The notes under the pieces: model-generated | What the model was told of the DNA's origin: nothing | Databases searched by the model: none | What the model saw: only the letters and a program-made list of their open reading frames with translations | Shown: positions 23,156 through 55,901 of the stretch, piece by piece | Layout: every line of letters begins with the position of its first letter | How positions within the stretch are numbered: the stretch's first letter is position 1 | Program-made: the position numbers and the translations under genes | Assembly (NCBI GenBank): GCA_002269645.1 | Contig: NIVC01001200.1 | Location: forward strand, 186,001-250,000 | DNA length: 64,000 nt | From: Macrostomum lignano | Taxonomy: Eukaryota | Reading direction: 5' to 3'

Positions 23156-24521
23156 TGGAAGAATTGAAGACGAAACAGCGCGGAAATGACATCGAAAACA
23201 AACTTACTAAAAACGAACTTTTTATTCCTAAACTATGGAGCAAGAGTTTAAACATTCAAACCGAAATAAATTTTCTAACTACTTAATTAAGATTCAAGCT
23301 CTTAACCTTGCCCAAGCATCTTCAAAAGAATATTTTTTATTTTGGGGTCGTTTTTTTACTTAGCTGCAGTTGCTATTCCAGAACGAGCATTAAAAACATA
23401 AAAAGCTCTGGTACGAGTAAAACTGTGAAATATAAAATTCATTTTACTGCATAAACTATCACTGCCTTTACCGGAAGCCAAATGTACTTAAATATTGGAT
23501 ATGTCGCTGGATTAAAACTGAGTGTGCAATCTGAAAATACGAGCCGTATGTAAGAGAAATACAACGTATTTCTGCATCATCCATGCAGGCTATGAATAAA
23601 TAAAGTTGCTCATACTCGTAGAAACGGATACATTTTTGCTCTCTGGGGTTGTGGGACCAACAACGTACGGACCTGGGCCATGGGGTTTTGTGCAATGGTA
23701 CCTGAGTTTTTAACCTATTGTCTGTGTTTGATGAAATTAATAAGTATGGAAAAATAGCTTATTGTATTTAATCAATATCTGATGCTTGAAACCTCAATAT
23801 AAAATAGATTTTTTTTGCGTGCAAAACTGTAATTTATGATTCATTAGCTCTATTCCAACATGCTTCAAGATTTTTATTGAGTTGACAGGCTGTCAGTCTT
23901 ATTATCCACCGAAAAAGCTCTCAAAAGAGCTGGAGCTCTAGGAAAATTCACACGCTATGACATGGTTTGCTACGGGGCTGGTTTTTTACAGGCCTTTTAC
24001 GAGCGTAGTTAAAGGAATCCAGCAGGTGAGGAATTTCTGCGGCTCATCGAGACTCGGCTTCAGTGTTGAGCGACAAATGTAACCTTCAGATGTTTCCTTC
24101 CAGATTGGCGACAGACACACGTGTACTGAGTTATTTGACAGTGGGAACCTGCTTGAGCGTTGGCCATTGTGCCAATCCGAAGTCATCTATAAGTCAATCG
24201 GGAATTGTCTGCAGCAAAACTATGAACAGGCATGAAAAAATTCAGGAATCAACTGTCAATTATACAATAGATTTCTGATTTGAGACATTGCTACTGCTAA
24301 AGGCTCATTTGTGATTTAGCTTGTAATAAATAGAATTGGAAATCTTGATGGCGTAAGCAAGGGACGGACTACTCCGAACATAGCTGTTGTCGGAATAATA
24401 GCCACATACGCTCGTATTTGTTTCTATGGTTAAGCGTCTGTATCTAATAGAGGAAATATTCGAGCACTGAGCTTACATTATACGCTCGTGTTCAACATGA
24501 TTTTTGTTCAAGTTTTCCAAA

Positions 24522-24922
24522 TTTCGGAACGATGGAGCCTGTGACGCACTAAAAGTCGTGGTGGAATCTCGCGCAGGCAGACCGAGTTTTCCTTCGCCAG
24601 TAGCCTCTGCAGCCACATGCTGTCCTCTCACACGGCTCTAAGGGTGCAAAGCGTTTATTTTATGGCGAAACTTATTCGGCCTGTGCGAGAGATTTTACGA
24701 TTTAAATCTTTATTCGTCTACTTCTCTCAGTCAGTAGTAGAAATTAAATCTTTCACAAGACCTATAACTGTTTGCAGTGACTTGGACCGCTTCGTGGGAC
24801 TTTACTCTTTAATCAGCTGGAATTAATAATCCAGCCCAGGGCCTCATCCCTGAAGATGAAAAATGGAATCTGTTTTCAAGCTAAATAACACAGCTCCCGA
24901 ATGCTCGGATAGGTATTTTATT
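24522..24922 (+). repeat. Dispersed repeat of about 400 bp, copy 1
   Basis: Colinear with 34423-34812, e.g. AATCTTTATTCGTCTACTT...CCCTGAAGATGAAAAATGG...GGATAGGTATTTTAT. Confidence 0.85.
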
Positions 24923-26795: not shown

Positions 26796-27908
26796 CTACT
26801 TCTCATGGCGACGCAATGAGTCCAGCACGTGTAGCGTGGAGCGACAAGGTACGAACACGCAGTCAAGCCGAAAATTTGCATCAACCTTCTTCCGTGATGA
26901 AGCATCGCAAAGCCTTATGACTGCAGAGAGAAACTGATCATCCTTGTACACATCGAGACCTCCATCCCACATGACGCCAGTGCCCTCTACCGTGCCATCC
27001 AGCTGGCTATAATAGTTTCTCATACTCGTACCACGACGACCACAATCAAAGCCCTCGACTTGAATTCGCATTTTGGAACCTTCATAGTGGATGGACAGAC
27101 AGCAAGTGCTGTGATTCGGTAGCCTCCGACGCTGCATTTCGAGACCGATTTTGTTCAGGTACCAGTTGCAGAGCTCTAACTCGTTGTACATGATGCAAAG
27201 TATTTTTTTGCTGTCGCCTGTATCCAAAGCGCGCTTGAATTCCTCTTCAAATTGGAGGCTGTCTGGCTCGTAATTCATTAAATATAACGGAGTTATTGAT
27301 CCTTGATTTACAGTGAGGCTGCATGATCGCTGGTCAATTGTATCCAGTGTTGCCCCCACCTCGGAGACTCCCGGAACTCTCGAGAAGTGACAGAACATAA
27401 ACCCGCAGGCAAGAAAATACTCACAGTCTTCTGGCTTCAGCTTCAAGCCGAGTAGTCTCTCGCCGGTCACCGGATCACACTGAATCGCCAGACTTTTGAT
27501 GCTGCATGCGCAGACGCACTCGGATGCGAATTTGCACAAATCATAGAAAAGCAATTCGAGCGTCAATTCCAATTCCTGGAATTCCTCGGTATGACAGGCG
27601 AATCCATTTATCTCTACTGTGATCGGAAATTGTGCCGGATTCCACAGCAGCGAGTGATCCCTTGTTTGCAAACTTGGTCGACTTGGCGAGCTCTGATTAG
27701 CGTCTCTTCTACGAAAAAATAGGTGGAAAGATTCTTTGCTCTGATGCACTGCTCTCTGAGAATCGTCTTCTTTTATAGACAGCTTCAGCGACGGCCCGTC
27801 ATGATTTTTGACCGGTTGCCTCAGCTCTGGGGACAACTCTCCTAAAATGATTTTACATGATTCGAGAACTTTGGTAAATCCTTCGCTGTATAATGGCTGT
27901 AGTGCCAT
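26796..27908 (-). CDS. Intronless 370-aa ORF, unknown function
   Basis: Non-repetitive ATG-initiated ORF; no domain recognised. Confidence 0.6.
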   Translation of the reverse strand: MALQPLYSEGFTKVLESCKIILGELSPELRQPVKNHDGPSLKLSIKEDDSQRAVHQSKESFHLFFRRRDANQSSPSRPSLQTRDHSLLWNPAQFPITVEINGFACHTEEFQELELTLELLFYDLCKFASECVCACSIKSLAIQCDPVTGERLLGLKLKPEDCEYFLACGFMFCHFSRVPGVSEVGATLDTIDQRSCSLTVNQGSITPLYLMNYEPDSLQFEEEFKRALDTGDSKKILCIMYNELELCNWYLNKIGLEMQRRRLPNHSTCCLSIHYEGSKMRIQVEGFDCGRRGTSMRNYYSQLDGTVEGTGVMWDGGLDVYKDDQFLSAVIRLCDASSRKKVDANFRLDCVFVPCRSTLHVLDSLRRHEK

Positions 27909-28427
27909 CCCTAAATTCTCTGTAGCCTTGTCGCTTCAATGCTTTTTTGAATATGATTTTTTCTACGTTATGTAATTGCTGTAACTGTTGTAAGTTTAAG
28001 CTCTCAAATTCTCAGCAGCTAACTAGGGACTATCAGCTCAGCACTGTCCTGCCAATAAAAGCTACGCGGGTATGCGCGAAGTTTTTCCGATCCAGAATGT
28101 GAAACGCTCACTGGCCAGGGGATAGAGGCGCATGAAATCGCTGTATCGCCATTTCATTGGATCCAAAATTTCCGCCTATTACGTCCTCTATAGATAGCTT
28201 TAGCATTAGGCAGTGAAAAGTTGCAAAAGAACATTGCACATGCCATGGCTAACTGTACAGAGTTTAGTTGTGTACATTGAAGCACCCAAGCAAGGCACTG
28301 AATTAGAGTTCGAAATGTTGTATACCGACAAACTGCTTACTAAGATTTTCATAGGTTGAACTGCAACTTTGCTGCGACGTCTACTGAATTTTAGGACCGA
28401 GTTCATCTGTCTATTGTCAAAGCCCAG

Positions 28428-29864
28428 ATGAATTTAGCACAGGCTTCTAGTATTCCACGGCAAATTCAAGCCGAGTTAGATTTAAAAACAATTTCAGAGC
28501 TGAAAAAATTAAACTTTGAGCCAGAGAACTTTACTGATCGATTATACTTCACTAGACGCGTCGCCATTGAAGTACTTCTCTATGCTTGCCTCAAAGATTC
28601 TCAACAGGCTATTTACAATAGACTGGTAAACCTGTTTGACAGGTTCACGAGAGCCTGCGAAGGTGATTGTAAGGAACTGAGCAAGCAAAACTTCGGCCGA
28701 CCACTGCTGCGATGCCTGCAGACGGTAGATTCAAATTTACTTTTGAAGGGACAAAATGGAACCCACGATTCCGTGCGTCTGTGGTTGATGCATTCCCAGA
28801 CTGGCAAGGCCGGCCAGCAGCAGTCAGAGCACACGGTGGAGTCGCATGCAGAGCAGAGCCAGCAGCAGTCAGAGCACACGGAGGAGTCGCATGCAGAGCA
28901 GAGCCTGCAGCAGTCAGAGCACACGGAGGAGTCGCATGAAGAGCAGAGCCTGCAGCAGTCAGAGCACACGGTGGAGTCGCATGCAGAGCAGAGCCAGCAG
29001 CAGTCAGAGCACACGGTGGAGCCGCATGAAGAGCAGAGGCAGCGAAAGCCAGACGAAGAGAATGAAACTCATTCGGCTATTTTGGAAGTCCCAGACGGCT
29101 ACAGGGATTGCAGAATCTCAGCCCTACTGTACCTCATCATCAGTGAAATGACTGATGCATTCCTAGAGTCCAAACGCCTGGCAGTCGAGATCCCCTGTTT
29201 CGTTGAAATGTTCCTCAATAGTAGCAAAAATAACCGAGATAACCTTCCCGCGCTTCTCGGTGAGTTTTTTGCTCTAAGCCGACTGTGCTTTCACGAAGAA
29301 TACTACTTTGATAAGAAATTCCGGTATCGCTGTGTTACAAAACAATTCGACTTCAGTATTGAGGACAGCAGTCGCAAGTCTGTAGCAAAAGTCAGCGTAA
29401 AGAGCGTCTGCTTTTGCTGCCCAAAGTTCTTCGACACGGCTGGAAAGAATCAGAGTTCTTTGTGGAATGCGGAGAAAAAGGCGATGAGATTCGAATCAAA
29501 ATCAAAATCAGCCAACATCCTGCTGCACAACTGCAACTGCGATTTCTGCATTGACAATCCAGTTCAAAAAGTGCAGGTCAGAGGTAGATTTAGCTCTGAT
29601 GAAAATTGCGAGCGACACAAAGAGTTTTCAGAGATTGTAAAAGATCTGAAGAAGGGCACCGTGTACTTAATGCGCACCGAGATGGTGTTCGAACTCCGGT
29701 ATGCTTTGGACAATGCAGAGGCTGAGAAATATGGACGATCAAAGCAGAGGAAGCTCCAGATGCGGGATCTTCTACGCAAAATTTTGAATCCAGAAGGAAT
29801 TGACGGGCAGAAGGAAATCTCGGATCCAATAAATGTACTGGTTGACCGGTCATCTACCGAGTGA
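28428..29864 (+). CDS. Intronless 478-aa ORF with 5 x 15-aa Q/E/H-rich repeats
   Basis: Long ATG ORF; 45-bp repeats at 28815-29039 (QQQSEHTVESHAEQS); no domain recognised. Confidence 0.65.
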   Translation: MNLAQASSIPRQIQAELDLKTISELKKLNFEPENFTDRLYFTRRVAIEVLLYACLKDSQQAIYNRLVNLFDRFTRACEGDCKELSKQNFGRPLLRCLQTVDSNLLLKGQNGTHDSVRLWLMHSQTGKAGQQQSEHTVESHAEQSQQQSEHTEESHAEQSLQQSEHTEESHEEQSLQQSEHTVESHAEQSQQQSEHTVEPHEEQRQRKPDEENETHSAILEVPDGYRDCRISALLYLIISEMTDAFLESKRLAVEIPCFVEMFLNSSKNNRDNLPALLGEFFALSRLCFHEEYYFDKKFRYRCVTKQFDFSIEDSSRKSVAKVSVKSVCFCCPKFFDTAGKNQSSLWNAEKKAMRFESKSKSANILLHNCNCDFCIDNPVQKVQVRGRFSSDENCERHKEFSEIVKDLKKGTVYLMRTEMVFELRYALDNAEAEKYGRSKQRKLQMRDLLRKILNPEGIDGQKEISDPINVLVDRSSTE

Positions 29865-31519: not shown

Positions 31520-33952
31520 CAGTCTAACGTAAGGCTTCACCAGATTCGTCTAATCTAGTAATAGATTTAGCTTGTAAGCACTGGAATTTTGCTGACATCG
31601 AAGCGAAAAAAAACAACGGCCTCCTCTCGCTATCCAGCCAGACCAGCTCTACACTAAAGGACAGATAACAAAAGCTGAAGTTCGAAGGCCAAGCCAGCAG
31701 ATTGCGAACGCGTGACACAGTGGACTCGCAGCAATTCTTGGGGGTGATATGGTTGCCTAACAAAAGGACAGAGAAAAATGCTCGAGCGATAACCCTGCCC
31801 CACTCAAACTATGCATTGCTCTTCATTTTGTCAACTAAACCAGTTTGTTTGCTTGACTATAAAATACACTGTCTTGAATAATTTTCGGCAGAGAGAGAGA
31901 TTCGGAGATGTGAGCCTCACACTCATAACAGGGCCCTTAGAGGCCAGTGTGTTAGAAAGTCTTTCTGGCTTGTGGGCAGAAGATAACAGAAAAATCTGGT
32001 AGCTACATAACAGTAGCTACCAGTGGCTCATCTTTCTCGCCAAATTGATGACGGCCTGAGATGAAGCCGAGTTCTGCAGCGTCTGGGTCCTGGGATATCT
32101 TTACATTTGGCCTTGACATAAATTTCGCTCATCGGTGCTATAGATATCTTCTTGATTACTTCCAGTAGGGACGCAACGCGTTTTATCACTCGATGTTGCA
32201 AGCGAAATTCTTCGGTCACTGAATTCTAAGGATTTTCCCGCAATATCTAATTTAATTTTAACGTTAGTAATCCTTCAGCAACATAGAATGGGTGCGTGAT
32301 CTCGCAGTCCCAAATCTGACGCGCAAGCGCAATGCCACTTGGCCTAATAGGTTTGAAATCTGGCCATTTGCGGATCGCATATTTACAGAGCATGGCTTCA
32401 GACTAGGTTTTCTGGATAGAGGTGCTGATATAATTTATTTTCAATAAGACAATTCGAGGCGCCGGTGTCAACTAAAATCTTTTCGCTTAATCCGTTGATC
32501 TGGCTGTCGAGAAATAATCCGGAATTCACTACTTGACTTGATATTTCTGCTTCTATGCTCTTCTCTGACTCTTGCTTCTCTGTTGCTTTCTTAGCTGCCA
32601 CATCTCGCTGGATGGCTGTCTCTAACTTTCTTAATTCCTGCTTCATTTCCCTAAGTTCAGTTCCAAGTTCAGTTCTTGTTGCACTCTTGTCTGGCTCTTC
32701 TTTCGCTGACTCCGCTTGGACTTTCCCAACCAACCATTGGCGCAAGTCCTGCAATGCGTTTTTAAGATCTGATGGCTCTCTTGCTACTTTTGATTCGTCT
32801 GTCGAAGCGTTCTTTCCTTCGACTTCACTAAGTCTCAAGTCTATGCTGCTCAACGCACATCTCTGGGCTACCGCAGCTTCGCTTCGCTTCTCTAATTCTT
32901 CTGTCGATGGCTCTGACTGTCTAGCTAAGTTCGCTGACTTCTGTCTATCGATTTCTGATAATCTTCGTTCCTCTCTTGAGCAATTTTGACACCGACTGCT
33001 CTCTGCTTCCTACTATGAGTAGTATCGTTGGCGCGGATAAATTTTACTGTTACTCTCTGGCGCAGGAAGTTCATAATTTTGTAGTCGTTTGAAATATCAG
33101 TGTTAGTTGCATGAAAGAAAATACATGTATCTCTATTTTTGCTATCTCGTAGGAATCCGTAGCCTCTATAATAATTATACCAGACTAAATTACCATATTC
33201 TACATTCCCTGATCTGACTTGCTGGTCCTCTACTGCTGCAGCTCTTCTATTGGGAGCGAATCGATTCAGTGGTTGGGGGCGGTTGACCCTCCCTTGGTGC
33301 CGCCCCGTTGGTAGTTTAAAGAGTTCCGTCTAGCTGGGCAGTCTCTGGCCAGGTGCCTTTCGTCGGATTCCCAGGGGATTCCCAGCGATCGGAGATTTTA
33401 AAGCCATTAATTACTATTTGCCTATCGCCGGTCGGTGAGTCCTACCAAGATTTCTCCACCAGTCGCAGGTACGGTACAAGTAAATGAATAACACGGTTGA
33501 ACACACTTCCAGATAGATTTAGATTGAGTGATAAGATAATCCTATTCTGATAGAACGGCTGATGCTTATAATAGGTTTGACTCGTGTACTCACGATTAAC
33601 TTGAAATTCACATATCTAAACAATAAGATTCGCAGATTAGCACCTGATAAATAATAGTAATATAATTAACGCAAATCGATGAGCGGATCTCAGCGCTGGA
33701 AGAAGTGAAACGATGAAACCAGAACACGAGACTAGCGGAGAAGCTCCCTACACACCTGGCCTAACCCCAAGGTCCTACTCTCAGAAGAGGACACTGACGG
33801 CCACTGACAGAGGACACTGACAGTTCAGCGAATCCCTGGTCAAATCCTACCACTTTTGCATTTCAGTGAAACACTGCATGGGGCCCTCGGAATCGAGGTC
33901 GCGTACTGTGTCAAATCGACAGCTCCTGTCCAGACCGCGCTTGCCGGCGACA
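31520..33952 (-). mobile_element. Decayed Ty3/Gypsy-like LTR element (LTR, PBS, coiled-coil gag, protease, RT remnant)
   Basis: ILVDTGASNCLI aspartic protease after a coiled-coil. PBS TGGTGGAGAA (33461-33452) resembles the complement of a tRNA-Ala 3' end. TATA-like CTATATAAG in the candidate LTR (about 33462-33952). No 3' LTR found. Confidence 0.65.
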
Positions 33953-34422
33953 AACTCTGAACGAGGTCGTCGCAAATGTTACGCCGGCAAGGCTACTGCG
34001 GTCGGGCAACGCAATAAAATATCGGCCGGGGTCTCGACTCGATAGGCGCCTCAAAGCGCGGCAGATGGCAAAACGGCCGGGAGATGAGAACAAAACCAGA
34101 ACAAAAAGGAGAAGTGGGATCTGACCGCGCCGTCATATATTGTCTCATATATATGATGATCATATACTCGAGTCTCTCCAAACCCCAATCAAGCCGGGTG
34201 GTGGGTGTCTGGCTGGCCGGTCAGTAATCCCAATTGCTGACCCAATCCCAATCCCAATTTGTTAATTTGTATGGTTTAACGTCTGTATCTAAATAAGTCT
34301 CATTGATGGTGATGAGATCGGGGGGAAAACTATTAAAGTCCAGAGCTTCAAGACTGAGTATTATATCAATAGTTTGATGTACACCACATGCTTATCATGA
34401 ATTTTGTATAAGTGTTCCCTTT

Positions 34423-34812
34423 TTGGAACGATGGACCTGTTGACTAACTAGAAGTCTCGGTGGAACCTCGCCTGTTTGCCATCGTCAGTAGTCGCAGCCA
34501 CACGCCATCCTCTCACACCGCTCTCAGTGTGCAAAAGCGTTTCCTTTATGGCGAATCTTTATTCGACCCTGTGAGAGATTTTACGATTCAAATCTTTATT
34601 CGTCTACTTTTCTCAGTCAGTAGTAGAAATTAAATCTTTCACAGGACCTATACTTGTTTGCAGCGACTTGGACCGCTTCCTGAGGACTTTTACTCTTTTA
34701 GTCTGCTAGATTAATAATCCAGCCCAGGGCTTCATCCCTGAAGATGAAAAATGGCATCTATTTTCCAGCTAAATAACACAGCTCCCAAATGCCCGGATAG
34801 GTATTTTATGGT
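34423..34812 (+). repeat. Dispersed repeat of about 400 bp, copy 2, abutting the DIRS-like element
   Basis: See copy 1 at 24522-24922. Confidence 0.85.
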
Positions 34813-35078
34813 TGCGATTTCAGGGGCCGGTTTTAACCGGCTCTGTAATCGTGTTTAGCCGACGGGGCCGCCCCCTCCGCCCGTCTGTGCGTGCGGCCCG
34901 CGCGTGTGCATCCCTGCCGCAAGGTGGGGTGCTGGGTGCCGGCCGGCAGGCGGGGGTGTTGGGTTGGGGGTGGGCGGCGTCGGCCCCCTTTTATTTGTGC
35001 GCTCACGCTCTCTCGTGCGCGCTGCGAGAGCGCTTTGGCTCGTAAAATTTTTTTTGCGACTATCTGGCTCTGGCTATC

Positions 35079-36095
35079 ATGCATCGTGTGGACCGACTAA
35101 CAGTCAAACAACTCAAGAGTGAGCTGGGTAGCCGAGGCCTCTCAACCGCAGGCAATAAGTCGGCCTTGCAAGCCAGACTGAGACAACACGAGGGGCAGTC
35201 ACAGCTTCAAGACGGCGGGACATCGGCATTGACATCGGCATCGACATCGCCCTGTGCGCAGGAGGAGCTCCAAGACCAAGGCCGGGACCCACGGGAGGCG
35301 GACCTGGACGGCGAGATTCGGCGGGCGCAGAAACGGCTGCAGCTCCTAGAGCTTCAAACACGCGAGCGAGAGCTTCGGGAACGCGCCGTCGTGACTGCTC
35401 GTACAGAATCAGGTGAGCAGCAGAATCTTTTCGCTGAACTTATCAACCCAACAGGCCCCGTCAGCGCTAGAGCCAACCCCCGGCCGGTCGGGCAGCCGTG
35501 TCTACTCGTCAGAGACTTTGTCGATGATCTGTCAGGCCAGGCTGACGAGCTGCTCACCAGGGGCAGCTCTGGCGGCCTCGTGCTCAAGAAGTCGACGACC
35601 AAGCTGGACGGCATGACAATTGGGCAGTGGTTCGCCGGCAGTATGAAGGTCCTGCTTCAGATACTTGAAGACACAGCGCCGCAGGTGACCAGCAAGGGCC
35701 AAGTGTACAGCACAACTGAGCAAGTCAAAGATTACGCCCAGTACAATGTCCAGGTGGCCGAGCTATTCGACAGATTCCCAGCGCACCGGGTGATCAGATT
35801 CGACCATGACTACCGCCAGCACCGCGCAGCTAACAGCCTTCGCTGGGGCAAAGACTGCGCCCAGATGTCGATCAGGCACCTGCTCAGCATTAAGACGGAC
35901 CAGTACAACCAGACAGCCAAGCGAAACCAGCCTAGCAACAAGAGCCGCGTCATGGGTCCGCGGACATCCTCAGGCCGCGAGCTGTGCTTGTCCTTCAACA
36001 GCACCAACGGCTGCATGAGGAGCAACTGCCGATTCCTCCATGCCTGCCGAATCTGTGAGGGCAGCCACTCCGAGCAAAATCACGCAAAAAACTGA
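35079..36095 (+). CDS. gag: DIRS/Ngaro-type gag (N-terminal SAP domain, C-terminal CCCH/CCHx zinc finger)
   Basis: LTVKQLKSELGSRGLSTAGNKSALQARL (SAP) and ELCLSFNSTNGCMRSNCRFLHACRICEGSH; directly upstream of a DIRS-type RT. Confidence 0.85.
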   Translation: MHRVDRLTVKQLKSELGSRGLSTAGNKSALQARLRQHEGQSQLQDGGTSALTSASTSPCAQEELQDQGRDPREADLDGEIRRAQKRLQLLELQTRERELRERAVVTARTESGEQQNLFAELINPTGPVSARANPRPVGQPCLLVRDFVDDLSGQADELLTRGSSGGLVLKKSTTKLDGMTIGQWFAGSMKVLLQILEDTAPQVTSKGQVYSTTEQVKDYAQYNVQVAELFDRFPAHRVIRFDHDYRQHRAANSLRWGKDCAQMSIRHLLSIKTDQYNQTAKRNQPSNKSRVMGPRTSSGRELCLSFNSTNGCMRSNCRFLHACRICEGSHSEQNHAKN

Positions 36096-39000
36096 GCAAG
36101 CGCGCCGACACGGCGCGCGAAACCGATTTTACCCCTCCTGCTTTTAACTGCCTCGCTCAGCCCGCTCCCGTGCCCTGCATCGTCAAGCCTCCAGTGCGGA
36201 TGTCCGATCTGACGCAGCCAGTGGGCGATCTCTGCATCGACGCCTGGCGCTCCGAGCTTGTGGGCGACCCCGACGCTGATTTTATTCTCGACGGCATCGA
36301 GAGCGGCTTCTCCATTGTCGATGACTTCGACTTTACGCCGTGTCTCTGCAGCAACTACCAGTCCGTCAACCGGAATCGCGACCAAGTCCAAGCTGTTATC
36401 GGAGAAGAAATCCGGCTCGGTAGGTACGTCCCAGTCGTGGACAAGCCTGCGATGGTCTGTCCGCTGGGAGCCATTCCGAAAGACAGCTCCGGCATCCGGC
36501 TAATCCATGATTGCTCCGTCCCTCGCGGCTGCAGCCTGAACGATCACTATGCCCAACAACGGCGTCTCCGCTTCACCTCCGTCGACGAGGCCGTCAGGAT
36601 GATGCAGCCCGGCTGGTTTATGGCAAAGGTGGACATCGCGTCAGCCTACCGCAGCGTGCCAATTTCTCCGCAGTGCTACCAAGCCACCGGCACCCACTGG
36701 GACTTCGGCAACGGCTGCTCAACCTTCCTGGTGGATACGCGGTTACCATTCGGCAGCAGAGCCTCCGTCAGCATTTTCCATCGCCTCACGCAAGCGGCCC
36801 GGCGAATGATGTGTCGCAAGGGGTTCCTGGCAACCGTCGTTTTCATCGATGACTTCCTCGTCATGGCCAGGACGAAAGCCGAGTGTGACAGGGCCTACCA
36901 CGAGCTGCGCAACCTGCTCACCCGGCTTGGCTTCACCATCAACAAGAAAAACGACCTCAAGGAGTGCGCCGCCCCGCTGGTTGCGATTCTGCAGCACCAA
37001 GAAGCCTTCAGCGGCTGCTCGGTTTCAGTCTACACTGACAGCACCGCCGCCTGCGGCATCATTAACTCGGGTTCCGCCAAGCACCAAGGTATTGCCGACC
37101 TGCAGAAGCGCGTCGACCTGACCTGCATTCAACGCGACATCATCGTCCGCGCGCACCATGTGCCTGGCCGCTTCCAGCTGCTCGCAGACCCGCTGTCCAG
37201 AGCGCATGACCCCAGCCAGCTTGCCAACTTTCTGTTTCGCTTCTATGGCACCTGCTATGTGCCAACCAGCTTGCTTGCCTCCGCTTGCTTAAGCTCTGCC
37301 GCTGCCTCCCACCTTCTGTTTCAGGCCCGCCTCCTGTGGTCCCGGTTCCCGGCCAAGCAGGAGCACTATCCATTGCCGAGGATCGAGGACCTGTTCGCAC
37401 GGCTGGGCGGCGGCTACAAGTGGAGCAAGCTCGACCTGGCCAAGGCGTTTATGCAGCTGCCGATCTCCGAGGATAGCAAGCAGTTCCTCGTCGTCAACAC
37501 CCAGCGAGGACTGTTTCAAGTCAACCGCTTGCCCTTCGGCATCTGCTCAGCCAGCGCCATCTTCCAGCGCGTGCTCGACACCCTGGCGGGGCACCTCGAC
37601 GGTGTTCAAGTCTACCAGGATGACATCTTGGTGACGGGCTCTACATTGGCTGCGCACAAGGCCAACCTGATGCAAGTGCTGCACAAGCTGCAAGAGGCCG
37701 GTCTGCACATCAACGTGACCAAGTGCGCCTTCTTCAGAGATTCGATCGACTACCTGGGTCACCGGATCGACCGTCACGGTTTGCGGCCACTCGCTGACAA
37801 GATCGAGGCCGTGCAGCGTGCGCCGGCGCCGACCGATGTGAGTCAGGTGCGCTCCTACCTGGGCATGCTGACTCACTATGCAAAGTTCCTGCCCAACTTG
37901 GCGTCGGTTGCAGCACCTCTCAACCACCTGCTTACCAAGGGCGCAACTTGGAAGTGGGGCGATCCCGAGGACCAGGCCTTCCGTGCTTCAAAGCAGCTGT
38001 TGCTGGACTCTGGTGCCCTGATGCACTTCAACCCGGACTTGCCTCTTCGGCTGGAGTGCGACGCGTCAGCATACGGCATTGGCGTCGTGCTCAGCCACCG
38101 CGTGAACGGCCAAGACCAAGCGATCGCGTTCGCCAGCAAGTCTCTGACCTCAGCCCAGCGCAATTACTCCCAGCTGGACAAGGAGGCGCTGGCAATCATC
38201 TACGGCGTGCAGCGCTTTCACCAATTTCTTTACGGTCACCACTTCACCATCGTGACGAATCATCGGCCGCTCCTCGGACTGCTGGGCCCGGACAAGGAAA
38301 TCCCGACGCACGCTGCTGCCAGAATGCAGAGGTGGGCCATCCGACTATCGGGCTACCAGTACTCCATGGAGTTCCGGCCGGCCGAGAAGCACGGAAACTG
38401 CGATTCCCTCTCCCGCCTGCCGCTCAAGGGCAACTTCGTCGAAGAAGCCGCGGTGCACTCGCTCACTCTAGAGGACGATTCGAGCGTCGCAGTGACTGCT
38501 GCTGCCATTGCCAAGGCAACTCAAGCCGACACGGCACTGTCAAAGCTGCTGTGGGCCCTGCGGTCGGGACAGGAGCTGCCAGCTAACGACTTCCCGGACT
38601 TCGCCCATCGTCAAGCAGAGCTTTCAGTCGAAGCCGGTTGTGTGCTGATGGGATCTCGCGTCGTTATCCCGGACACCCTGCGCCAGTCGGTGCTGCGGGA
38701 GCTGCATCTGGCACATCCCGGTGCGAGCCGAATGAAGGCCCTCGCACGGAGCTTCGTCTGGTGGCCTGGGCTAGACAAGGAACTAGAGCAGCTCGGGAGA
38801 GAGTGCGACACCTGCAGAGCTCATCAGGCAGACCCAGCAAAGGCTCCAGTGCATCCCTGGCTGTTCCCCAACGAACCATGGAGCCGCCTACATGTCGACT
38901 TCGCCGGCCCAGTCAACGGTCGAATGTACATAGTCATTGTCGACGCCTACAGCAAATGGCCCGAAGTTCGCCTCATCAGCGACACGTCTGCTGGCGGGAC

Positions 39001-39598
39001 CATCGGGCATCTCCGTGACGTATTCTGCAACTTGGGCCTGCCAAGGATTCTCGTCTCCGACAACGGCCCCAGTTCGCCTCTCATGCGTAGCAACGGGATC
39101 CCGCACGTGACTTCAGCGCCCTACCACCCGGCTACCAACGGACAGTGTGCAGGTAATTTCAAGATGGAGTTTTTCGACATTAAACATATTTTTGATCGAT
39201 TTAAAAAGATATTTTCTTTTTGGAAGAGAAAGCTAGACGCATCAAAGTCCAAGTTCTTCACGGAATTCGATGCGTTCGCGGACAAGTTCTTCAAGAACTT
39301 TTATGCGTGCGCGGAGAAGTTTTTCGAGTCCCACGAGTCCCACGAGAAAATTTCGAAGATGAAGCTCAACAGGAATATTTTTGATATGCTGACCAGTAAG
39401 AAAATGTACGACATCAATCCTTTCCAAACTGCCAATAAAAGCAGCAGAAATATCGACTCTGGCTTTCAAGATAAAAAATCAGCCACAGAGATTCAAAATA
39501 ACGAATTTGAGTTTACCCAAAAAACAAACGCCATCGAAAAAAGACATCGGAGAGCAAATGTGATGAATCAACGAAGTTCTAAACGGAATCTTGGGTGA
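36059..39598 (+). mobile_element. pol: Chimeric pol ORF: DIRS/Ngaro RT + partial RNase H, fused to Gypsy RT-RNase H-integrase (truncated) and an unrelated tail
   Basis: DIRS part: PLGAIPK..RLIHDCS, AKVDIASAYR, LPFG, FIDD, YTDS, HHVPG...ADPLSR. Gypsy part: YPLPRIEDLF, DLAKAF, LPFG, YQDD, CDASAYG, NYSQLDKE, H..H..C..C, DFAGP, SDNG, YHPATNG. Frame open from 36059 with no stop. Confidence 0.9.
36086..36118 (+). promoter_or_regulatory. Candidate -1 programmed ribosomal frameshift signal
   Basis: A_AAA_AAC in gag phase, 7-nt spacer, then hairpin GCGCGCCG-ACA-CGGCGCGC; pol lies in the -1 frame. Confidence 0.75.
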
Positions 39599-39757
39599 TG
39601 AGCAATCTCGAAGTGCTAGTGCGAGTTTATCTGACCAGTGATCGCCTTTGTTTGCTGAAATTTGCTGACAAATTTTCCTACATGCACACAAAGCTCTTAA
39701 AGCATGTCCTACCTTGTTTTTAACAAACTTTTCTGGCACCTCTGTTTGAAGATTATG

Positions 39758-40385
39758 GCACCTCTTAGTGTACGGGATGACAGTGTGCAGACTCTGGCAC
39801 CTCTTAGTGTACGGGATGACAGTGTGCAGACTCTGGCACCTCTTAGTGTACGGGATGACAGTGTGTAGACTCTGGCACCTCTTAGTGTACGGGATGACAG
39901 TGTGTAGACTCTGGCACCTCTTAGTGTACGGGATGACAGTGTGCAGACTCTGGCACCTCTTAGTGTACGGGATGACAGTGTGCAGACTCTGGCACCTCTT
40001 AGTGTACGGGATGACAGTGTGTAGACTCTGGCACCTCTTAGTGTACGGGATGACAGTGTGTAGACTCTGGCACCTCTTAGTGTACGGGATGACAGTGTGT
40101 AGACTCTGGCACCTCTTAGTGTACGGGATGACAGTGTGTAGACTCTGGCACCTCTTAGTGTACGGGATGACAGTGTGCAGACTCTGGCACCTCTTAGTGT
40201 ACGGGATGACAGTGTGTAGACTCTGGCACCTCTTAGTGTACGGGATGACAGTGTGTAGACTCTGGCACCTCTTAGTGTACGGGATGACAGTGTGCAGACT
40301 CTGGCACCTCTTAGTGTACGGGATGACAGTGTGTAGACTCTGGCACCTCTTAGTGTACGGGATGACAGTGTGCAGACTCTGGCAC
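39758..40385. repeat. 39-bp tandem repeat, about 16 copies
   Basis: Unit CTGGCACCTCTTAGTGTACGGGATGACAGTGTG(C/T)AGACT. Confidence 0.95.
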
Positions 40386-41107: not shown

Positions 41108-41532
<425 letters not shown>

Positions 41533-42356
41533 GGTAAGCGGCTGAAGGTGAAAGTTCTGTTGGCAAACTGGAAAAGTCTAACAATGCCAAGCTGCGTACA
41601 AATAAATGCATCCGAAACTCTCAAATAACAGCAGAATGAACGTGTCAGAATACGAAGACAAGATTTTTTCTACTTGAAATATTGTTGAATGAACCCAAGA
41701 GTTCTTGACGGCTTGTGCCTAAGCTATTGTGGGTCAAGTGGTGGATATTTTCTGTTCTGACTGGGAAGATTAACTGCGAGTCAAAGGGCACTCGGACCAA
41801 ACTTTCCCCAATTAGCATTGTAATTGTAATTTATCGTACTGAATTCAGAATTTTAACTTTTTCAGTTCCTAAGCCCGGTTGACACTACTGCTAGTAGCTC
41901 CAAGTGTCCAAAATGCTTAAATCAAGATTAAAATGGGCCAAAACCCGCTGTACATTGACCTAGGCGTTCGTGTGTCGAGAAGCCTTGGATCGGTGAACTG
42001 ACTGCTCAAAAGCTTATCAGTGAAACGCTTATTTCTAAACTGAGATTTCAATGCTCGTTGGAGTTTAAGTAAGTTTGCATGCTTGCATGTAGTTTCTAAG
42101 AAATCAATGTTCGAATGCACTGAATATTTTCTGAGATTCGAAGCTCAGAAGGGCCAGATGTTGAATGTCAAAAGGCTAGGTCAAAGGTCAAATGACATAA
42201 CGAATAATATTGGAACGTACAATAGAGTTTAACCTGCAAAAGACCAGACACTGGAGTTACCCGAATGTCACACGCCTAATTCCCTGCGTTGAGCAGTGAC
42301 GGCAGGGTTTTGCAAACCTTAGCCTGGTTTTGACTTCATGCTGGAGCAAGTGCTGT

Positions 42357-42957
42357 TCATCGGTCTAGCATTCTAATTGTACATCAGAACAGAATCGGTT
42401 TATCGGTCTAGCATTCTAATTGTACATCAGAACAGAATCGGTTTATCGGTCTAGCATTCTAATTGTACATCAGAACAGAATCGGTTTATCGGTCTAGCAT
42501 TCTAATTGTACATCAGAACAGAATCGGTTTATCGGTCTAGCATTCTAATTGTACATCAGAACAGAATCGGTTTATCGGTCTAGCATTCTAATTGTACATC
42601 AGAACAGAATCGGTTTATCGGTCTAGCATTCTAATTGTACATCAGAACAGAATCGGTTTATCGGTCTAGCATTCTAATTGTACATCAGAACAGAATCGGT
42701 TTATCGGTCTAGCATTCTAATTGTACATCAGAACAGAATCGGTTTATCGGTCTAGCATTCTAATTGTACATCAGAACAGAATCGGTTTATCGGTCTAGCA
42801 TTCTAATTGTACATCAGAACAGAATCGGTTTATCGGTCTAGCATTCTAATTGTACATCAGAACAGAATCGGTTTATCGGTCTAGCATTCTAATTGTACAT
42901 CAGAACAGAATCGGTTCATAGGTCTATCATTCTAATTGTACATCAGAACAGGGTCGG
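42357..42957. repeat. 43-bp tandem repeat, about 14 near-identical copies
   Basis: Unit TTATCGGTCTAGCATTCTAATTGTACATCAGAACAGAATCGGT. Confidence 0.95.
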
Positions 42958-43147
42958 TTAATTGTCCTCCTTGGTCTTTGCAACCCTGTCATGTGCTTTC
43001 AAGCAGCGTGCTTGTAGCCAGTCATCAACTTATAATGAGAATCGTTTCAGATTAATACTCATACCGGTAAAACTGCCCAGTGAATAAAAAGTAACTAAGC
43101 AATCAATACCTCAAAAACTCAGCTATATGCTAGGATTGCTCAAGTTT

Positions 43148-45346
43148 TTATAAACAAAGCAGCCGGCTGCATGGCCCTGGCCACCGCTCTCTCCGCAGCG
43201 TGTAGAGCAGGAAGTGGAAGGTGCGCATCTCCTGCGGTGACACGTAGTGGAATGAAATCGAGGAGCTGCTGCAGCACCGCGGGCCCTGCAGCGCAATGGG
43301 AAAGGAAAGTTCGAAAGAACTTTATTCGAAAGAAGGGGTTGAAAAAGTGTTCACGTCTCACCGATCTCACAGGCCGCACGCTGTACTGCCACAGCCAGTG
43401 CGTTGTGGGCGCGGCACCGAAGTCCAGGTGGCTGGCGAAGCCCATCGGATGGAATCGCTCGCCACCCTCGCTGCCGGGGTCGAACGAGTCGACAAACTCA
43501 ACGCCACGGCGTTCCATGCAGATTCCTGAAATTGAGCTGCTGCGGTAACTTGCTGGTGGATTTATTGTCTCTGTCCCTGTGCCTGTGTTTTTGGCTATTG
43601 TTCTAGCGTCTACGTCCTAGCTTCCTTGTGTCATAGTCCTAGTGTCCTGGTGTCATGGTGTCCTAGTGTCATGGTGTCCTGGTGTCATGGTGTCCTAGTG
43701 TCATGGTGTCCTAGTGTCATGGTGTCCTGGTGTCATGGTGTCCTAGTGTCATGGTGTCCTGGTGTCATGGTGTCCTAGTGTCATGGTGTCCTGGTGTCAT
43801 GGTGTCCTAGTGTCATGGTGTCCTGGTGTCATGGTGTCCTAGTGTCATGGTGTCCTAGTGTCATGGTGTCCTAGTGTCATGGTGTCCTGGTGTCATGGTG
43901 TCCTAGTGTCATGGTGTCCTAGTGTCATGGTGTCCTGGTGTCATGGTGTCCTAGTGTCATGGTGTCCTAGTGTCATGGTGTCCTAGTGTCATGGTGTCCT
44001 AGTGTCATGGTGTCCTAGTGTCATGGTGTCCTGGTGTCATGGTGTCCTAGTGTCATGGTGTCCTAGTGTCATGGTGTCCTAGTGTCATGGTGTCCTAGTG
44101 TCATGGTGTCCTGGTGTCATTGTGTCCTAGTGTCATGGTGTCCTAGTGTCATGGTGTCCTAGTGTCATGGTGTCCCAGTGCCCTAGTGTCCCAGTTTCCT
44201 AGTGTCCCAGTGCCTTGGTGTCCTAGAGTCCTAGAGTCCTTGAGTCCTAGTGTCCTAGAGTAATAGAGTCCTTGAGTCCTAGAGTCCTTGAGTCCTAGTG
44301 TCCTAGAGTCCTAGTGTCCTAGAGTCCTAGTGTCCTTGAGTCCTAGTGTCCTAGAGTCCTAGTGTCCTAGAGTCCTAGTGTCCTTGAGTCCTAGTGTCCT
44401 AGAGTCCTTGAGTCCTAGAGTCCTAGTGTCCTAGAGTCCTAGTGTCCTTGAGTCCTAGTGTCCTAGAGTCCTTGAGTCCTAGAGTCCTAGAGTCCTTGAG
44501 TCCTAGTGTCCTAGAGTCCTAGTGTCCTAGAGTCCTAGTGTCCTTGAGTCCTAGAGTACTAGTGTCGGAGCTACTAGCAGTAATGTAAATAGACCTTAGG
44601 TGTCCTAAGTGCCTTGGTGTCTGTGTGCAGCCAACAATAATTGGGAGCATTGTTTTAACACCTGTGTGTACGAATTCGGAGAGATCAGTGGAACAGGCAT
44701 ATTTGATTGGCTGCAGACTGTCGGCTGTCCACAAAAGCTGCGCCAGGCATCCAGGCACAATGTACATGCCGGCCGGCCAGGGCGAGCCACTGCTAGTGAG
44801 CACACTGAGAGCCCCCGATTGAATTCCGAGGGAGAGCGTCTTTTGATATCCGGGCTGTAGGAGTGTCCAGTTTTCAGCAACTAGGAGCTGCCGCCCAGGC
44901 TCACCCATGTTGACGTCTTCCGACGTCACCGCGCCGCAGTCTTTGCCAGCCCCGGCTGCCAGCAGGTTGCGAACGGCGCCTCTGGACAGCGCATAGCCGG
45001 CGCCGCCCGACATGTAGCGCTGCCAGCGCCACCGCTGCGGCGTCCCCAGCCGCAGGCGCAGTAACCGGCCGGTCCACCAGGCGGAGTCCGGGCGCCGGCC
45101 GAGGCTCAGCAGGAAGCTGCGCAGATTCGGCATCAGCACGAAGGTGTCCACGTCAGCCTTGAGGAAGTAGTCGAAGTCGGCGAGCAGGTGCGCGCCAGCA
45201 AACTGGAAGGCGAGGCGGACTTTCCGCCACAGGTGAGCGCGGCCCTCCCGTGCGGCAACTTCTGCTGGTTCAGGAAATTTTCGGATCAGAAGAAAATTAA
45301 TAAGGTCGAAGGGCAAGTCGGCTACGACAGCTTTCTAATCTGCCTG

Positions 45347-45413
<67 letters not shown>

Positions 45414-45422
45414 GTGTGTGTG

Positions 45423-45473
<51 letters not shown>

Positions 45474-45498
45474 GTGTGTGTCTGTCTGTCTGTCTTAG

Positions 45499-45533
<35 letters not shown>

Positions 45534-45538
45534 GTGTG

Positions 45539-45617
<79 letters not shown>

Positions 45618-46714: not shown

Positions 46715-48140
46715 GCTAGATTAGCAATCCAATTATATTCCTGCATAATCCATGTAGGCTAGATTAGCAATCCATTCTATTCCTGCATGCAGGCCAGATT
46801 AGCAATCCATTCTGTTCCTGCATCATCCATGCAGGCTAGATTAGCAATCCATTCTGTTCCTGCATCATCCATGCAGGCTAGATTAGCAATCCATTCTGTT
46901 CCTGCATCATCCATGCAGGCCAGATTAGCAATCCATTATATTCCTGCATCATCCATGCAGGCCAGATTAGCAATCCATTCTGTTCCTGCATCATCCATGC
47001 AGGCTAGATTAGCAATCCATTCTATTCCTGCATCATCCATGCAGGCTGGATTAGCAATCCATTCTGTTCCTGCATCATCCATGCAGGCTAGATTAGCAAT
47101 CCATTCTGTTCCTGCATTATCCATGCAGGCCAGATTAGCAATCCATTATATTCCTGCATCATCCATGCAGGCCAGATTAGCAATCCATTCTGTTCCTGCA
47201 TTATCCATGCAGGCTAGATTAGCAATCCATTCTATTCCTGCATCATCCATGCAGGCTAGATTAGCAATCCATTCTGTTCCTGCATCATCCATGCAGGCCA
47301 GATTAGCAATCCATTCTATTCCTGCATCATCCATGCAGGCTAGATTAGCAATCCATTCTGTTCCTGCATCATCCATGCAGGCTAGATTAGCAATCCATTC
47401 TGTTCCTGCATCATCCATGCAGGCTAGATTAGCAATCCATTCTGTTGCTGCATCATCCATGCAGGCTAGATTAGCAATCCATTCTGTTGCTGCATCATCC
47501 ATGCAGGCTAGATTAGCAATCCATTCTGTTCCTGCATCATCCATGCAGGCTAGATTAGCAATCCATTCTGTTCCTGCATCATCCATGCAGGCTAGATTAG
47601 CAATCCATTCTGTTCCTGCATCATCCATGCAGGCTAGATTAGCAATCCATTCTGTTCCTGCATCATCCATGCAGGCTAGATTAGCAATCCATTCTGTTCC
47701 TGCATTATCCATGCAGGCCAGATTAGCAATCCATTCTGTTCCTGCATGCAGGCTAGATTAGCAATCCATTCTGTTTCTGCATTATCCATGCAGGCTAGAT
47801 TAGCAATCCATTCTGTTCCTGCATTATCCATGCAGGCTAGATTAGCAATCCATTCTGTTCCTGCATCATCCATGCAGGCTGGATTAGCAATCCATTCTGT
47901 TCCTGCATTATCCATGCAGGCTAGATTAGCAATCCATTCTATTCCTGCATCATCCATGCAGGCTAGATTAGCAATCCATTCTATTCCTGCATCATCCATG
48001 CCGGCTAGATTAGCAATCCATTCTGTTCCTGCATTATCCATGCAGGCTAGATTAGCAATCCATTCTATTCCTGCATCATCCATGCAGGCTAGATTAGCAA
48101 TCCATTCTATTCCTGCATGCAGGCTAGATTAGCAATCCAA
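46715..48140. repeat. 42-bp tandem repeat, about 34 copies
   Basis: Unit CAGGCTAGATTAGCAATCCATTCTGTTCCTGCATCATCCATG. Confidence 0.95.
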
Positions 48141-55100: not shown

Positions 55101-55290
55101 AGGTGCTGAACGCGCGCAGCACGATGGTGTTGGCGTTCTCCACCTGGGGCGGGGCGGAGGGCAGCGGGAACTTGTGACGTGAGCGTGTACTACTTATAGT
55201 AAATTACAGGAAAACAGACAGACAGACACACAGACAGACACTAAGACAAACAGACACACAGACACATAGACAGACAGACAGACAGACAGG

Positions 55291-55332
<42 letters not shown>

Positions 55333-55333
55333 C

Positions 55334-55364
<31 letters not shown>

Positions 55365-55367
55365 CTA

Positions 55368-55446
<79 letters not shown>

Positions 55447-55485
55447 AACACAGACAGACACTAAGACAAACAGACACACAGACAC

Positions 55486-55552
<67 letters not shown>

Positions 55553-55637
55553 CTAAGACAGACAGACAGACAGACAGGCAAACAGACAGACAGACAGACA
55601 GACAGGCAAACAGACAGACAGACAGACAGACAGACAC

Positions 55638-55668
<31 letters not shown>

Positions 55669-55719
55669 GGCAAACAGACAGACAGACAGACAGACAGGCA
55701 AACAGACAGACACACAGAC

Positions 55720-55776
<57 letters not shown>

Positions 55777-55845: not shown

Positions 55846-55900
<55 letters not shown>

Positions 55901-55901
55901 C

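What the first reader, a model, noticed from the sequence alone, without database searches (positions are those of the whole stretch)
36059..39598. One stop-free ORF fusing two retrotransposon superfamilies (DIRS/Ngaro RT + Gypsy RT-RH-IN) and a foreign tail
Seen: about 1180 open codons containing two RT cores (FIDD at about 36842, YQDD at about 37613). There are four apparent rearrangements, all in frame. (1) A deletion from DIRS RT into RNase H at about 36950. (2) A DIRS-to-Gypsy switch at about 37345 next to a TCCCGG duplication. (3) A shortened integrase segment after SDNGP at about 39070, where the expected QF is read out of frame and the frame is then restored. (4) Truncation just before the catalytic Glu at about 39145, running into 150 unrelated codons. 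No tyrosine recombinase ORF is visible. Established: DIRS elements integrate via a YR and Gypsy elements via a DDE integrase; they normally do not share a pol. Inference: four random junctions would all keep frame about 1 time in 81, which hints at a translated chimeric or domesticated gene, or a hybrid element. A very recent nested insertion plus chance is also possible.
Basis: partly seen in the sequence, partly recalled or inferred. Interest (0 to 1): 0.82.

Follow-up and report, generated by a model that had tools for sequence, protein, structure and literature searches.

The report
Dead mosaic of two retrotransposon fragments
The long open reading frame is real, but it is a broken patchwork: the front half of a tyrosine-recombinase (Ngaro/DIRS-like) retrotransposon joined to an internal piece of a Gypsy element and an orphan tail, most likely young genomic debris rather than a working hybrid gene or element.

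Summary
Window 36059-39598 (+) is 1179 stop-free codons. It holds a DIRS-order (Ngaro-like) RT/RNase H, then a Ty3/Gypsy RT-RNase H-integrase fragment, then about 150 orphan codons. All four rearrangements exist and keep the frame:
- a deletion of about 157 aa in the DIRS RT/RH at about 36950;
- the DIRS-to-Gypsy switch at 37345-37349;
- a -1 nt and a -17 nt deletion in the integrase core at 39066-39085;
- truncation after NGQ at 39145.

No tyrosine recombinase, LTR, terminal repeat, Gypsy gag or protease is present. Every enzyme module except the DIRS RT palm is crippled. The Gypsy RNase H also carries a window-specific catalytic Asp-to-Asn change (TDH to TNH). None of the 120 best-scoring database relatives listed spans both parts. 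The closest relatives of both parts are ordinary Macrostomum lignano elements.

The block lies in a region dense with satellites. The stop-free state is compatible with up to about 2-3% neutral divergence. My best reading is a young, non-autonomous mosaic made by template switching or break repair, with the frame kept by chance and by how the finding was selected. I found no positive evidence for a translated or mobile hybrid, and these tools cannot exclude one. Frame continuity in the integrase depends on the length of one C4 run, so raw reads are needed.

The parts
34396..34809 (+). Dispersed repeat forming the left flank. Its homology to a second copy at 24496-24921 stops exactly where the GC-rich block begins.
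   Evidence: 84% identity over 432 nt. The alignment ends at 34809.
34810..35078 (+). GC-rich 5' leader of the DIRS-like element, upstream of gag. Its role as a terminal or promoter region is inferred.
   Evidence: Composition jumps to 54-60% G+C. No matching repeat lies downstream.
35079..36095 (+). Intact gag-like ORF of 338 aa, with an N-terminal SAP domain, a coiled-coil stretch and a C-terminal C/H-rich zinc-knuckle-like motif.
   Evidence: ORF. Pfam SAP E=1.6e-12. Homologous to the gag of DIRS-like locus L002, E=7e-17.
36059..39598 (+). The 1179-codon open frame. It overlaps the end of gag in a different frame. The first ATG is at 36200.
36200..36949 (+). DIRS-order (Ngaro-like) RT, fingers and palm, with FIDD at 36842-36853.
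   Evidence: 44-52% identity to DIRS-like RTs; the best hits are M. lignano.
36944..36958 (+). Junction 1: an in-frame internal deletion of about 157 aa that removes the RT thumb and the N-terminal half of RNase H.
   Evidence: Alignment A1, columns 311-467. Split tblastn hits.
36959..37345 (+). C-terminal half of the DIRS RNase H plus the post-RH linker. It ends where relatives continue into the tyrosine recombinase.
   Evidence: P0003 and P0024 run on into Phage_int_SAM domains.
37340..37352 (+). Junction 2: the DIRS-to-Gypsy switch, TCCCGG-T-TCCCGG.
   Evidence: Sequence. Homology limits, and by eye from the P0001 sequence.
37349..39145 (+). Internal Ty3/Gypsy pol fragment. The RT lacks domain 1 (YQDD at 37613-37624). 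RNase H lies at about 38033-38356, with TNH at 38255-38263. Integrase HHCC lies at about 38666-38827. The integrase core lies at about 38873-39145 and lacks its Glu.
   Evidence: 64% aa and 67% nt identity to M. lignano P0241/L001. Pfam. The TDH-to-TNH change is unique to the window.
39066..39085 (+). Junction 3: paired -1 nt (at a C4 run) and -17 nt deletions. The net loss is 18 nt, and the frame is restored after four codons.
   Evidence: DNA alignment with L001.
39145..39146 (+). Junction 4: the end of Gypsy homology, just before the catalytic Glu.
   Evidence: Apparent extensions into the tail show almost no identities.
39146..39598 (+). Orphan K/F-rich tail with an internal ATG at 39164. 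It contains a 33-nt repeat (2.3 copies) at 39250-39325.
   Evidence: No family and no convincing homolog. Stop-free with p=5.5e-4 in dinucleotide shuffles. The 3-periodic G+C is confined to the first half. The structure model is low-confidence and helical.

Best explanation
This is a single-locus, non-autonomous mosaic of retroelement fragments.

What is there. The 5' half of a Ngaro-like tyrosine-recombinase retrotransposon (leader, gag, RT, part of RNase H) is joined on the same strand to an internal pol fragment of a Ty3/Gypsy element (RT minus domain 1, RNase H, integrase up to just before the catalytic Glu). That fragment is joined to unrelated AT-rich sequence.

How it arose (inferred). 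It formed in one or a few error-prone events. One candidate is RT template jumps between RNAs. These would also explain the internal DIRS deletion, the clustered small indels and the shared orientation. The other candidate is end-joining repair or deletion in a satellite-rich, rearrangement-prone region.

Why it is open. It is young enough that no stop codon has arisen. The junctions being in frame is chance, made visible because long ORFs attract attention.

What it can do. It cannot transpose on its own. It has no YR, no functional integrase, no LTRs and no 3' terminal repeats. If it is transcribed from the DIRS leader, it could at most yield gag and a catalytically dead pol fusion.

Shown: the anatomy, the missing parts and the absence of relatives with this architecture. 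Inferred: the mode of formation, the age and the lack of function.
For: Both parents are ordinary.
- The Gypsy part is 64% identical to a normal 1320-aa M. lignano gag-pol. That gene is flanked by two identical 300-nt direct repeats, read as its LTRs.
- The DIRS part is 44-52% identical to normal 530-670-aa RT/RH(-YR) proteins.
- All 120 top hits to the whole chimera cover only the 60% that is Gypsy.

Parts are missing or dead.
- About 157 aa of the DIRS RT thumb and RNase H N-terminus are gone.
- Gypsy PR and RT domain 1 are absent, and the integrase lacks 6 core residues, its Glu and its C-terminus.
- The RNase H catalytic TDH is TNH in the window only.
- rve scores below the Pfam cutoff.
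- There is no YR, gag/PR or integrase C-terminus anywhere in the 64 kb, and there are no flanking direct or inverted repeats.

It looks young.
- Deviations at conserved sites (20 of 177 for Gypsy, 11 of 68 for DIRS) are similar to those of its nearest relatives (15 and 21; 7 and 6).
- Only 3% of random substitutions would create a stop, so P(no stop) is 0.39 at 1% divergence and 0.15 at 2%.

Context. The block is surrounded by minisatellite and microsatellite arrays. Its G+C and GC3 profile matches the M. lignano element.
Against: - Four frame-preserving rearrangements have a chance of about 1/81.
- The -1 and -17 nt indels lie within 20 nt of each other and cancel, which looks like compensation or a single complex event.
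- The tail is stop-free at p=5.5e-4 by shuffling, and its first half has codon-like periodicity and host-like rather than TE-like synonymous codon use. Part of this is explained by a 33-nt repeat, and the second half shows no periodicity.
- All segments are in sense orientation behind an intact gag and leader, so transcription and translation of the fusion are conceivable.
- Copy number, expression and population data could not be examined.
Confidence: 0.7

Rival explanations
1. The frame is kept because the fusion is, or recently was, translated. It could be a host-exapted or TE-encoded chimeric gag-pol-like protein. Alternatively it could be a chimeric RNA that survived nonsense-mediated decay and was retro-copied, which would enrich for in-frame joins.
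For: - Every rearrangement is in frame.
- The -1 and -17 indels cancel within 20 nt.
- The tail is improbably open and partly codon-periodic, with an ATG at 39164.
- An intact gag ORF and leader lie upstream.
- All parts are on one strand.
Against: - No coherent domain set survives.
- The RNase H catalytic Asp is changed to Asn only in this copy.
- No listed hit shares the architecture, and the tail has only marginal matches in very large databases.
- Tail periodicity is confined to a region that holds a 33-nt repeat.
- The locus was selected for its long ORF, so 1/81 is not a fair p-value.
Confidence: 0.12
2. It is one copy of a multi-copy, non-autonomous hybrid family: a cross-order recombinant mobilised in trans by Ngaro-like or Gypsy machinery.
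For: - The 5' end and gag of the DIRS-like element look complete.
- All segments are collinear and in sense orientation, as expected for cDNA made by template switching.
- Complex LTR-retrotransposon insertions made by template switching are described in the literature (PMC1950507, listed; abstract only).
Against: - No 3' terminal or split direct repeat, no LTR, and no target-site duplication could be recognised.
- There is no second copy in the 64 kb.
- The junction 29-mer is absent from the metagenome contig collection.
- No protein with both parts appears among the listed hits.
Confidence: 0.08
3. It is an assembly or sequencing artefact. One or more junctions could be chimeric joins between multi-copy repeats. 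Alternatively the frame continuity could be an error in a homopolymer length.
For: - The block lies among long tandem arrays that are hard to assemble.
- Both parents belong to multi-copy TE groups.
- If the C4 run at 39067-39070 were really C5, the frame would read QFASHA and then stop at TAG 39088-39090.
Against: - The two parents share no long sequence at the junctions that could cause a collapse.
- The deletions have plausible biological signatures, such as the 17-nt loss inside a tandem duplication.
- This cannot be tested without reads.
Confidence: 0.08

Closest known systems
Ngaro-like tyrosine-recombinase retrotransposons (order DIRS)
   Same: It has the gag then RT/RNase H order, and the RT/RH is 44-52% identical to DIRS-like proteins. 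In those relatives the ORF, or the next ORF, continues into a YR (P0003, P0024, L002). No methyltransferase domain follows the RH.
   Different: The YR is absent and no 3' terminal or split repeats were found. The RT thumb and RNase H N-terminus are deleted. The gag carries a SAP domain.
Ty3/Gypsy LTR retrotransposons ('K02A2.6-like' pol); the closest is a Macrostomum lignano element flanked by identical 300-nt repeats (P0241/L001)
   Same: The RT-RNase H-integrase order matches. Identity is 64% at the protein level and 67% at the DNA level. The GC3-rich coding composition (0.75 vs 0.78) is the same.
   Different: Only an internal 1.8-kb pol fragment is present. There are no LTRs, gag, PR or RT domain 1. 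The integrase is cut before its Glu, has lost 6 aa, and the RNase H has TDH changed to TNH.
Complex or chimeric retroelement insertions made by RT template switching, or cDNA fragments captured at repaired breaks
   Same: The pieces are collinear and in sense orientation. The junctions are abrupt, and there is an internal deletion and clustered small indels. The phenomenon is described for LTR retrotransposons (PMC1950507, listed). cDNA capture at breaks is from my own knowledge.
   Different: Published cases mostly join elements of one superfamily or share an LTR. This one joins two orders and an orphan sequence. The mechanism is inferred here, not shown.
Domesticated Gypsy-integrase genes (e.g. 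GIN1, 'Gypsy retrotransposon integrase-like protein 1', a name carried by several database hits)
   Same: It contains a Gypsy-type HHCC and integrase core sequence in a long ORF with no LTRs.
   Different: Domesticated genes keep a complete fold and have orthologs across species. Here the core is truncated and no ortholog or protein of similar architecture was found.

Membership tests
DIRS-order (Ngaro-like) retrotransposon | DIRS-type RT/RNase H | tested here: met
   E=8e-82 to DIRS-like RT/RH proteins, but with an internal deletion of about 157 aa.
DIRS-order (Ngaro-like) retrotransposon | Tyrosine recombinase ORF | tested here: not met
   tblastn with relatives that carry a YR (P0003, P0024, L002 ORFs) finds nothing in the window.
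DIRS-order (Ngaro-like) retrotransposon | Terminal repeats (split direct or inverted) with an internal complementary region | tested here: not met
   No direct or inverted repeat of 40 nt or more pairs the 5' leader with downstream sequence in 30-44 kb.
DIRS-order (Ngaro-like) retrotransposon | gag-like ORF upstream of pol | tested here: met
   A 338-aa ORF homologous to the L002 gag, E=7e-17.
Ty3/Gypsy LTR retrotransposon | Long terminal repeats | tested here: not met
   None flank the block. The M. lignano relative has identical 300-nt flanking repeats.
Ty3/Gypsy LTR retrotransposon | gag and aspartic protease | tested here: not met
   Homology starts inside the RT at 37349/37352. No gag or PR match lies on this strand.
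Ty3/Gypsy LTR retrotransposon | RT-RNase H-integrase order with an intact D,D,E integrase | tested here: not met
   The order is kept, but the Glu and the C-terminal domain are missing, 6 aa are deleted, and rve scores 28.1 bits against a cutoff of 32.6.
Domesticated or chimeric host gene | Orthologs or the same architecture in other genomes | tested here: not met
   All 120 top hits cover only the Gypsy part. The tail has two marginal hits at E about 1e-4. The source genome and its close relatives may be absent from the databases.
Domesticated or chimeric host gene | Purifying selection, transcription and translation across the junctions | not testable with these tools
   No population, RNA or proteome data are available. 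The only hint is a window-specific loss of the RNase H catalytic Asp.
Mobile hybrid (non-autonomous) family | Several copies sharing the junctions | tested here: inconclusive
   There is no second copy in the 64 kb, and the junction 29-mer is absent from the metagenome contigs. The source genome itself could not be searched.

The most novel reading that the evidence does not exclude
The block could be a cross-order recombinant retroelement: a Ngaro-like 5' half with gag, a Ty3/Gypsy pol fragment, and a captured host-like coding tail. On this reading its reading frame has been preserved because the fusion is translated. It would be either a multi-copy non-autonomous family that needs translation in cis, or an exapted gag-pol-derived host protein.
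Probability: 0.1. Interest if true: 0.6.

Novelty: new member of a known kind. Interest (0 to 1): 0.25.

Why it matters
As it stands, this is another example of rearranged retroelement debris in a repeat-rich animal genome, probably that of a Macrostomum-like flatworm. It mainly serves as a caution. In GC3-rich transposable elements, long composite ORFs can survive several rearrangements by chance. If the junctions turned out to be multi-copy or expressed, it would be a rare documented recombinant between a tyrosine-recombinase retrotransposon and an LTR retrotransposon. It would then inform how retroelement orders exchange modules.

Tried and rejected
- Exact look-ups of the window gag and of M. 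lignano P0001 and P0003 in the assembly index found nothing on record.
- I asked whether the tail is a diverged integrase C-terminus. tblastn extensions run into it but show almost no identities, so I rejected this.
- I asked whether the tail relates to anything else in the window or in the flanks of L001. It does not.
- A single-sequence structure model of the tail had pLDDT 59.9 and was merely helical. It was too weak for a fold search, so none was run.
- I asked whether the copy of the left-flank repeat at 24.5 kb could serve as an 'empty site' to define the right boundary or a target-site duplication. Its continuation matches nothing downstream of the block.
- I tested simple nesting, with one element inserted into the other. 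No complementary halves of either element exist in the window. The only extra retroelement trace is a weak protease-like fragment on the opposite strand at 32.3-32.6 kb.
- Strong decay as evidence of age is not seen. Conserved-site deviations are close to those of the nearest relatives.
- Pfam hits such as zf-U11-48K (46787-47761) and DUF4081 (52899-53999) lie on tandem repeats, and I disregarded them.
Full report
**Observation**

Window 36059-39598 on the plus strand is 1179 sense codons followed by two stops. It is the longest open stretch in the 64 kb; the next longest is 489 codons. Pfam finds two reverse-transcriptase stretches, a Gypsy-type RNase H, the integrase HHCC zinc domain and a sub-threshold integrase core (28.1 bits against a cutoff of 32.6). 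Directly upstream, 35079-36095 is an intact 338-aa gag-like ORF with an N-terminal SAP domain. It is homologous to the gag of a DIRS-like locus from another organism (E=7e-17).

**The DIRS part**

The first 430 residues hit hundreds of 530-670-aa RT/RNase H proteins at 40-52% identity. The best two are from the flatworm Macrostomum lignano. Alignment with seven of these proteins shows that about 157 residues are missing between LGFTINKKN and DLKECAA, at about 36944-36958. The missing stretch is the RT thumb/connection and the N-terminal half of RNase H (split hits).

In the relatives, the RT/RH runs on into the N-terminal SAM-like domain of a tyrosine recombinase. This is seen in P0003 and P0024. 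In L002 the next ORFs carry the HxxR...Y recombinase signature. The order is therefore gag, RT/RH, YR with no methyltransferase, which is Ngaro-like.

In the window, homology to M. lignano P0001 can be followed by eye to LLWS(R) at about 37345, roughly 30 residues after the RNase H. That is where the recombinase would begin. No recombinase homolog exists anywhere in the window.

**The Gypsy part**

From AKQEHYPLPRIEDL (37349/37352) to NGQ (39145) the frame is 64% identical to the pol of a 1320-aa M. lignano gag-pol protein (P0241). It is about 50% identical to many 'K02A2.6-like' Gypsy pols. The M. lignano gene lies between two identical 300-nt direct repeats, which I read as LTRs. It has the same compositional signature as the window element: GC3 of 0.78 against 0.75, in flanks of about 40% G+C. 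The two are 67% identical at the DNA level.

The window fragment lacks gag, protease and RT domain 1 at its 5' end. At its 3' end it lacks the integrase Glu and the C-terminal domain.

A DNA alignment resolves the 'shortened integrase'. There is a 1-nt loss (GGNCCNCAG to GGCCCCAG) and a 17-nt loss inside a GCCGAGTTC-GCCGAGTT tandem. The net loss is 18 nt, and the QFAS codons are still visible out of frame.

I compared the window with its homologs at sites conserved in at least 90% of them. The window deviates at 20 of 177 sites, against 15 and 21 for its two nearest relatives. Most of the deviations are shared with that lineage. One window-specific change hits the RNase H catalytic motif: TDH is TNH at 38255-38263. 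Assigning that Asp to the active site rests on established knowledge of Ty3/Gypsy RNase H.

**The tail**

After 39145 the G+C drops to 38%. The 150 codons match no Pfam family, and a search of 1.84 billion cluster representatives gave only two marginal hits at E about 1e-4. They match nothing else in the window or in L001. Apparent BLAST extensions of integrase homologs into the tail are noise.

The frame is nevertheless open, where 6.6 stops are expected. That gives p=5.5e-4 in 200,000 dinucleotide shuffles; the other two forward frames have 5 and 11 stops. G+C is 3-periodic (0.34/0.30/0.50, p=5e-4). Synonymous codon use resembles the AT-richer ORFs of the window, not the transposable elements.

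Two things temper this. The periodicity is confined to 39146-39349, which holds a 33-nt (11-codon) repeat. The second half shows none (p=0.37). I therefore regard the tail as possibly coding or formerly coding. There is an ATG at 39164. Its origin is unknown. A single-sequence structure model was low-confidence and helical.

**Surroundings**

The GC-rich block starts at about 34810. That is exactly where a dispersed repeat ends (34396-34809, 84% identical to 24496-24921). The other copy's continuation matches nothing to the right of the block, so no empty site or target-site duplication can be defined. No direct or inverted repeat brackets the block. No further fragments of either parent lie in the window, apart from a weak protease-like trace on the opposite strand at 32.3-32.6 kb.

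The neighbourhood is dominated by tandem arrays. They include 39-, 43-, 16- and 42-bp minisatellites, (GTCT)n, and a 4-kb (GTTA)n array.

**Interpretation**

Both parents are ordinary and the product is a wreck. The only module left with an uninterrupted catalytic core is the DIRS RT palm. Nothing remains that could integrate the element or define its ends.

A search with the whole chimera returned 120 top hits that all cover just the 60% that is Gypsy. The junction-2 29-mer is absent from the metagenome contigs. There is therefore no sign of this architecture elsewhere, with the caveat that the source genome is evidently not in these collections.

The lack of stops does not need selection. 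Only 3% of random substitutions in this GC3-rich frame create a stop, so the frame would stay open with probability 0.39 at 1% divergence and 0.15 at 2%. Several large rearrangements alongside so little point decay suggest that the mosaic arose in one or a few error-prone events rather than by slow erosion.

RT template jumping between RNAs would also explain the shared sense orientation, the internal deletion and the clustered indels. Capture and deletion during break repair in a satellite-rich region is the alternative. That choice of mechanism is inference.

**What still argues for something more**

- Four in-frame outcomes have a chance of about 1/81.
- The -1 and -17 indels cancel within 20 nt.
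- The tail is partly codon-like and in frame.
- An intact gag and leader lie upstream.

I weigh these against ascertainment, since the locus was reported because of its ORF, and against the incoherent domain content. I assign about 0.12 to a translated or selected fusion, 0.08 to a mobilised hybrid family and 0.08 to an assembly or homopolymer artefact. If the C4 run at 39067-39070 is really C5, the frame stops at TAG 39088.

**Comparison and novelty**

The locus fails the membership tests for a functional DIRS-order element (no YR, no terminal repeats). It also fails those for a Ty3/Gypsy element (no LTRs, gag or PR, and an incomplete D,D,E). It resembles the known class of complex or chimeric retroelement copies (PMC1950507, listed). 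M. lignano is reported to carry many Ty3/Mdg4 (Gypsy) LTR-retrotransposon families, some of them transcriptionally inducible (PMC12801592), which fits young fragments.

It is a new instance of a known kind. Interest is low to moderate unless copy-number or expression data show otherwise.

Noticed in passing
window 35091-35192 (within gag 35079-36095): The gag-like protein of the DIRS-like element starts with a SAP DNA-binding domain (Pfam E=1.6e-12). It ends in a C/H-rich zinc-knuckle-like motif that is also present in the gag of L002. I do not recall a SAP domain being a usual feature of retrotransposon gag proteins.
   Followed up: partly
window 34396-34809 and 24496-24921: A dispersed repeat of about 430 bp, 84% identical between copies. 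One copy abuts the 5' end of the mosaic exactly. Its nature (SINE, MITE or a TE terminus) is unknown.
   Followed up: partly
window 9166-13299: A 4.1-kb perfect-looking (GTTA)n microsatellite of about 1033 copies at 99% matches. It produces 25% G+C and a GC skew near 1.
   Followed up: no
window 39756-40385, 41118-41533, 42355-42959, 43614-44566, 45347-45615, 46786-48118, 49883-58802: A dense series of minisatellites (39-, 43-, 16/24-, 42-, 20-, 30-, 28-, 22-bp units) and (GTCT)n, (TGTC)n and (ACAG)n arrays. They generate many spurious long ORFs and spurious Pfam hits (zf-U11-48K at 46787-47761, DUF4081 at 52899-53999).
   Followed up: partly
window 5757-6482 and 8354-9031 (+): Apparent exons of an Rrp44/Dis3-like exoribonuclease. 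The RNB domain scores E=2.4e-19; the Rrp44 cold-shock domain hit is weak. So the window contains at least one host gene.
   Followed up: no
window 15138-15785 and 21979-22635 (+): Two similar ORFs of about 215 codons, each with a weak PAN-domain hit (E about 2e-3) at the same residues. This suggests a local duplication.
   Followed up: no
window 32271-32625 (-): A weak retroviral-type aspartic-protease-like fragment on the opposite strand (Pfam E=8e-4, below cutoff; tblastn E about 3e-3). It is probably debris from another LTR element.
   Followed up: partly
window 26799-27935 (-) and 28395-29861 (+): Two long ORFs (379 and 489 codons, 48% G+C) with clear codon periodicity and no Pfam match. 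The second contains a 45-bp repeat at 28813-29043.
   Followed up: no
window 49179-49913 (-): A GC-rich ORF with a sub-threshold match to the end of the formin FH2 domain (E=1.1e-5, 25.3 bits against a cutoff of 34.8).
   Followed up: no
window 39146-39157: The Gypsy-to-tail junction reads CAG TGTGCAG GTAATT. It contains a repeated CAG and a splice-donor-like CAG|GTAAT. This may be chance.
   Followed up: no
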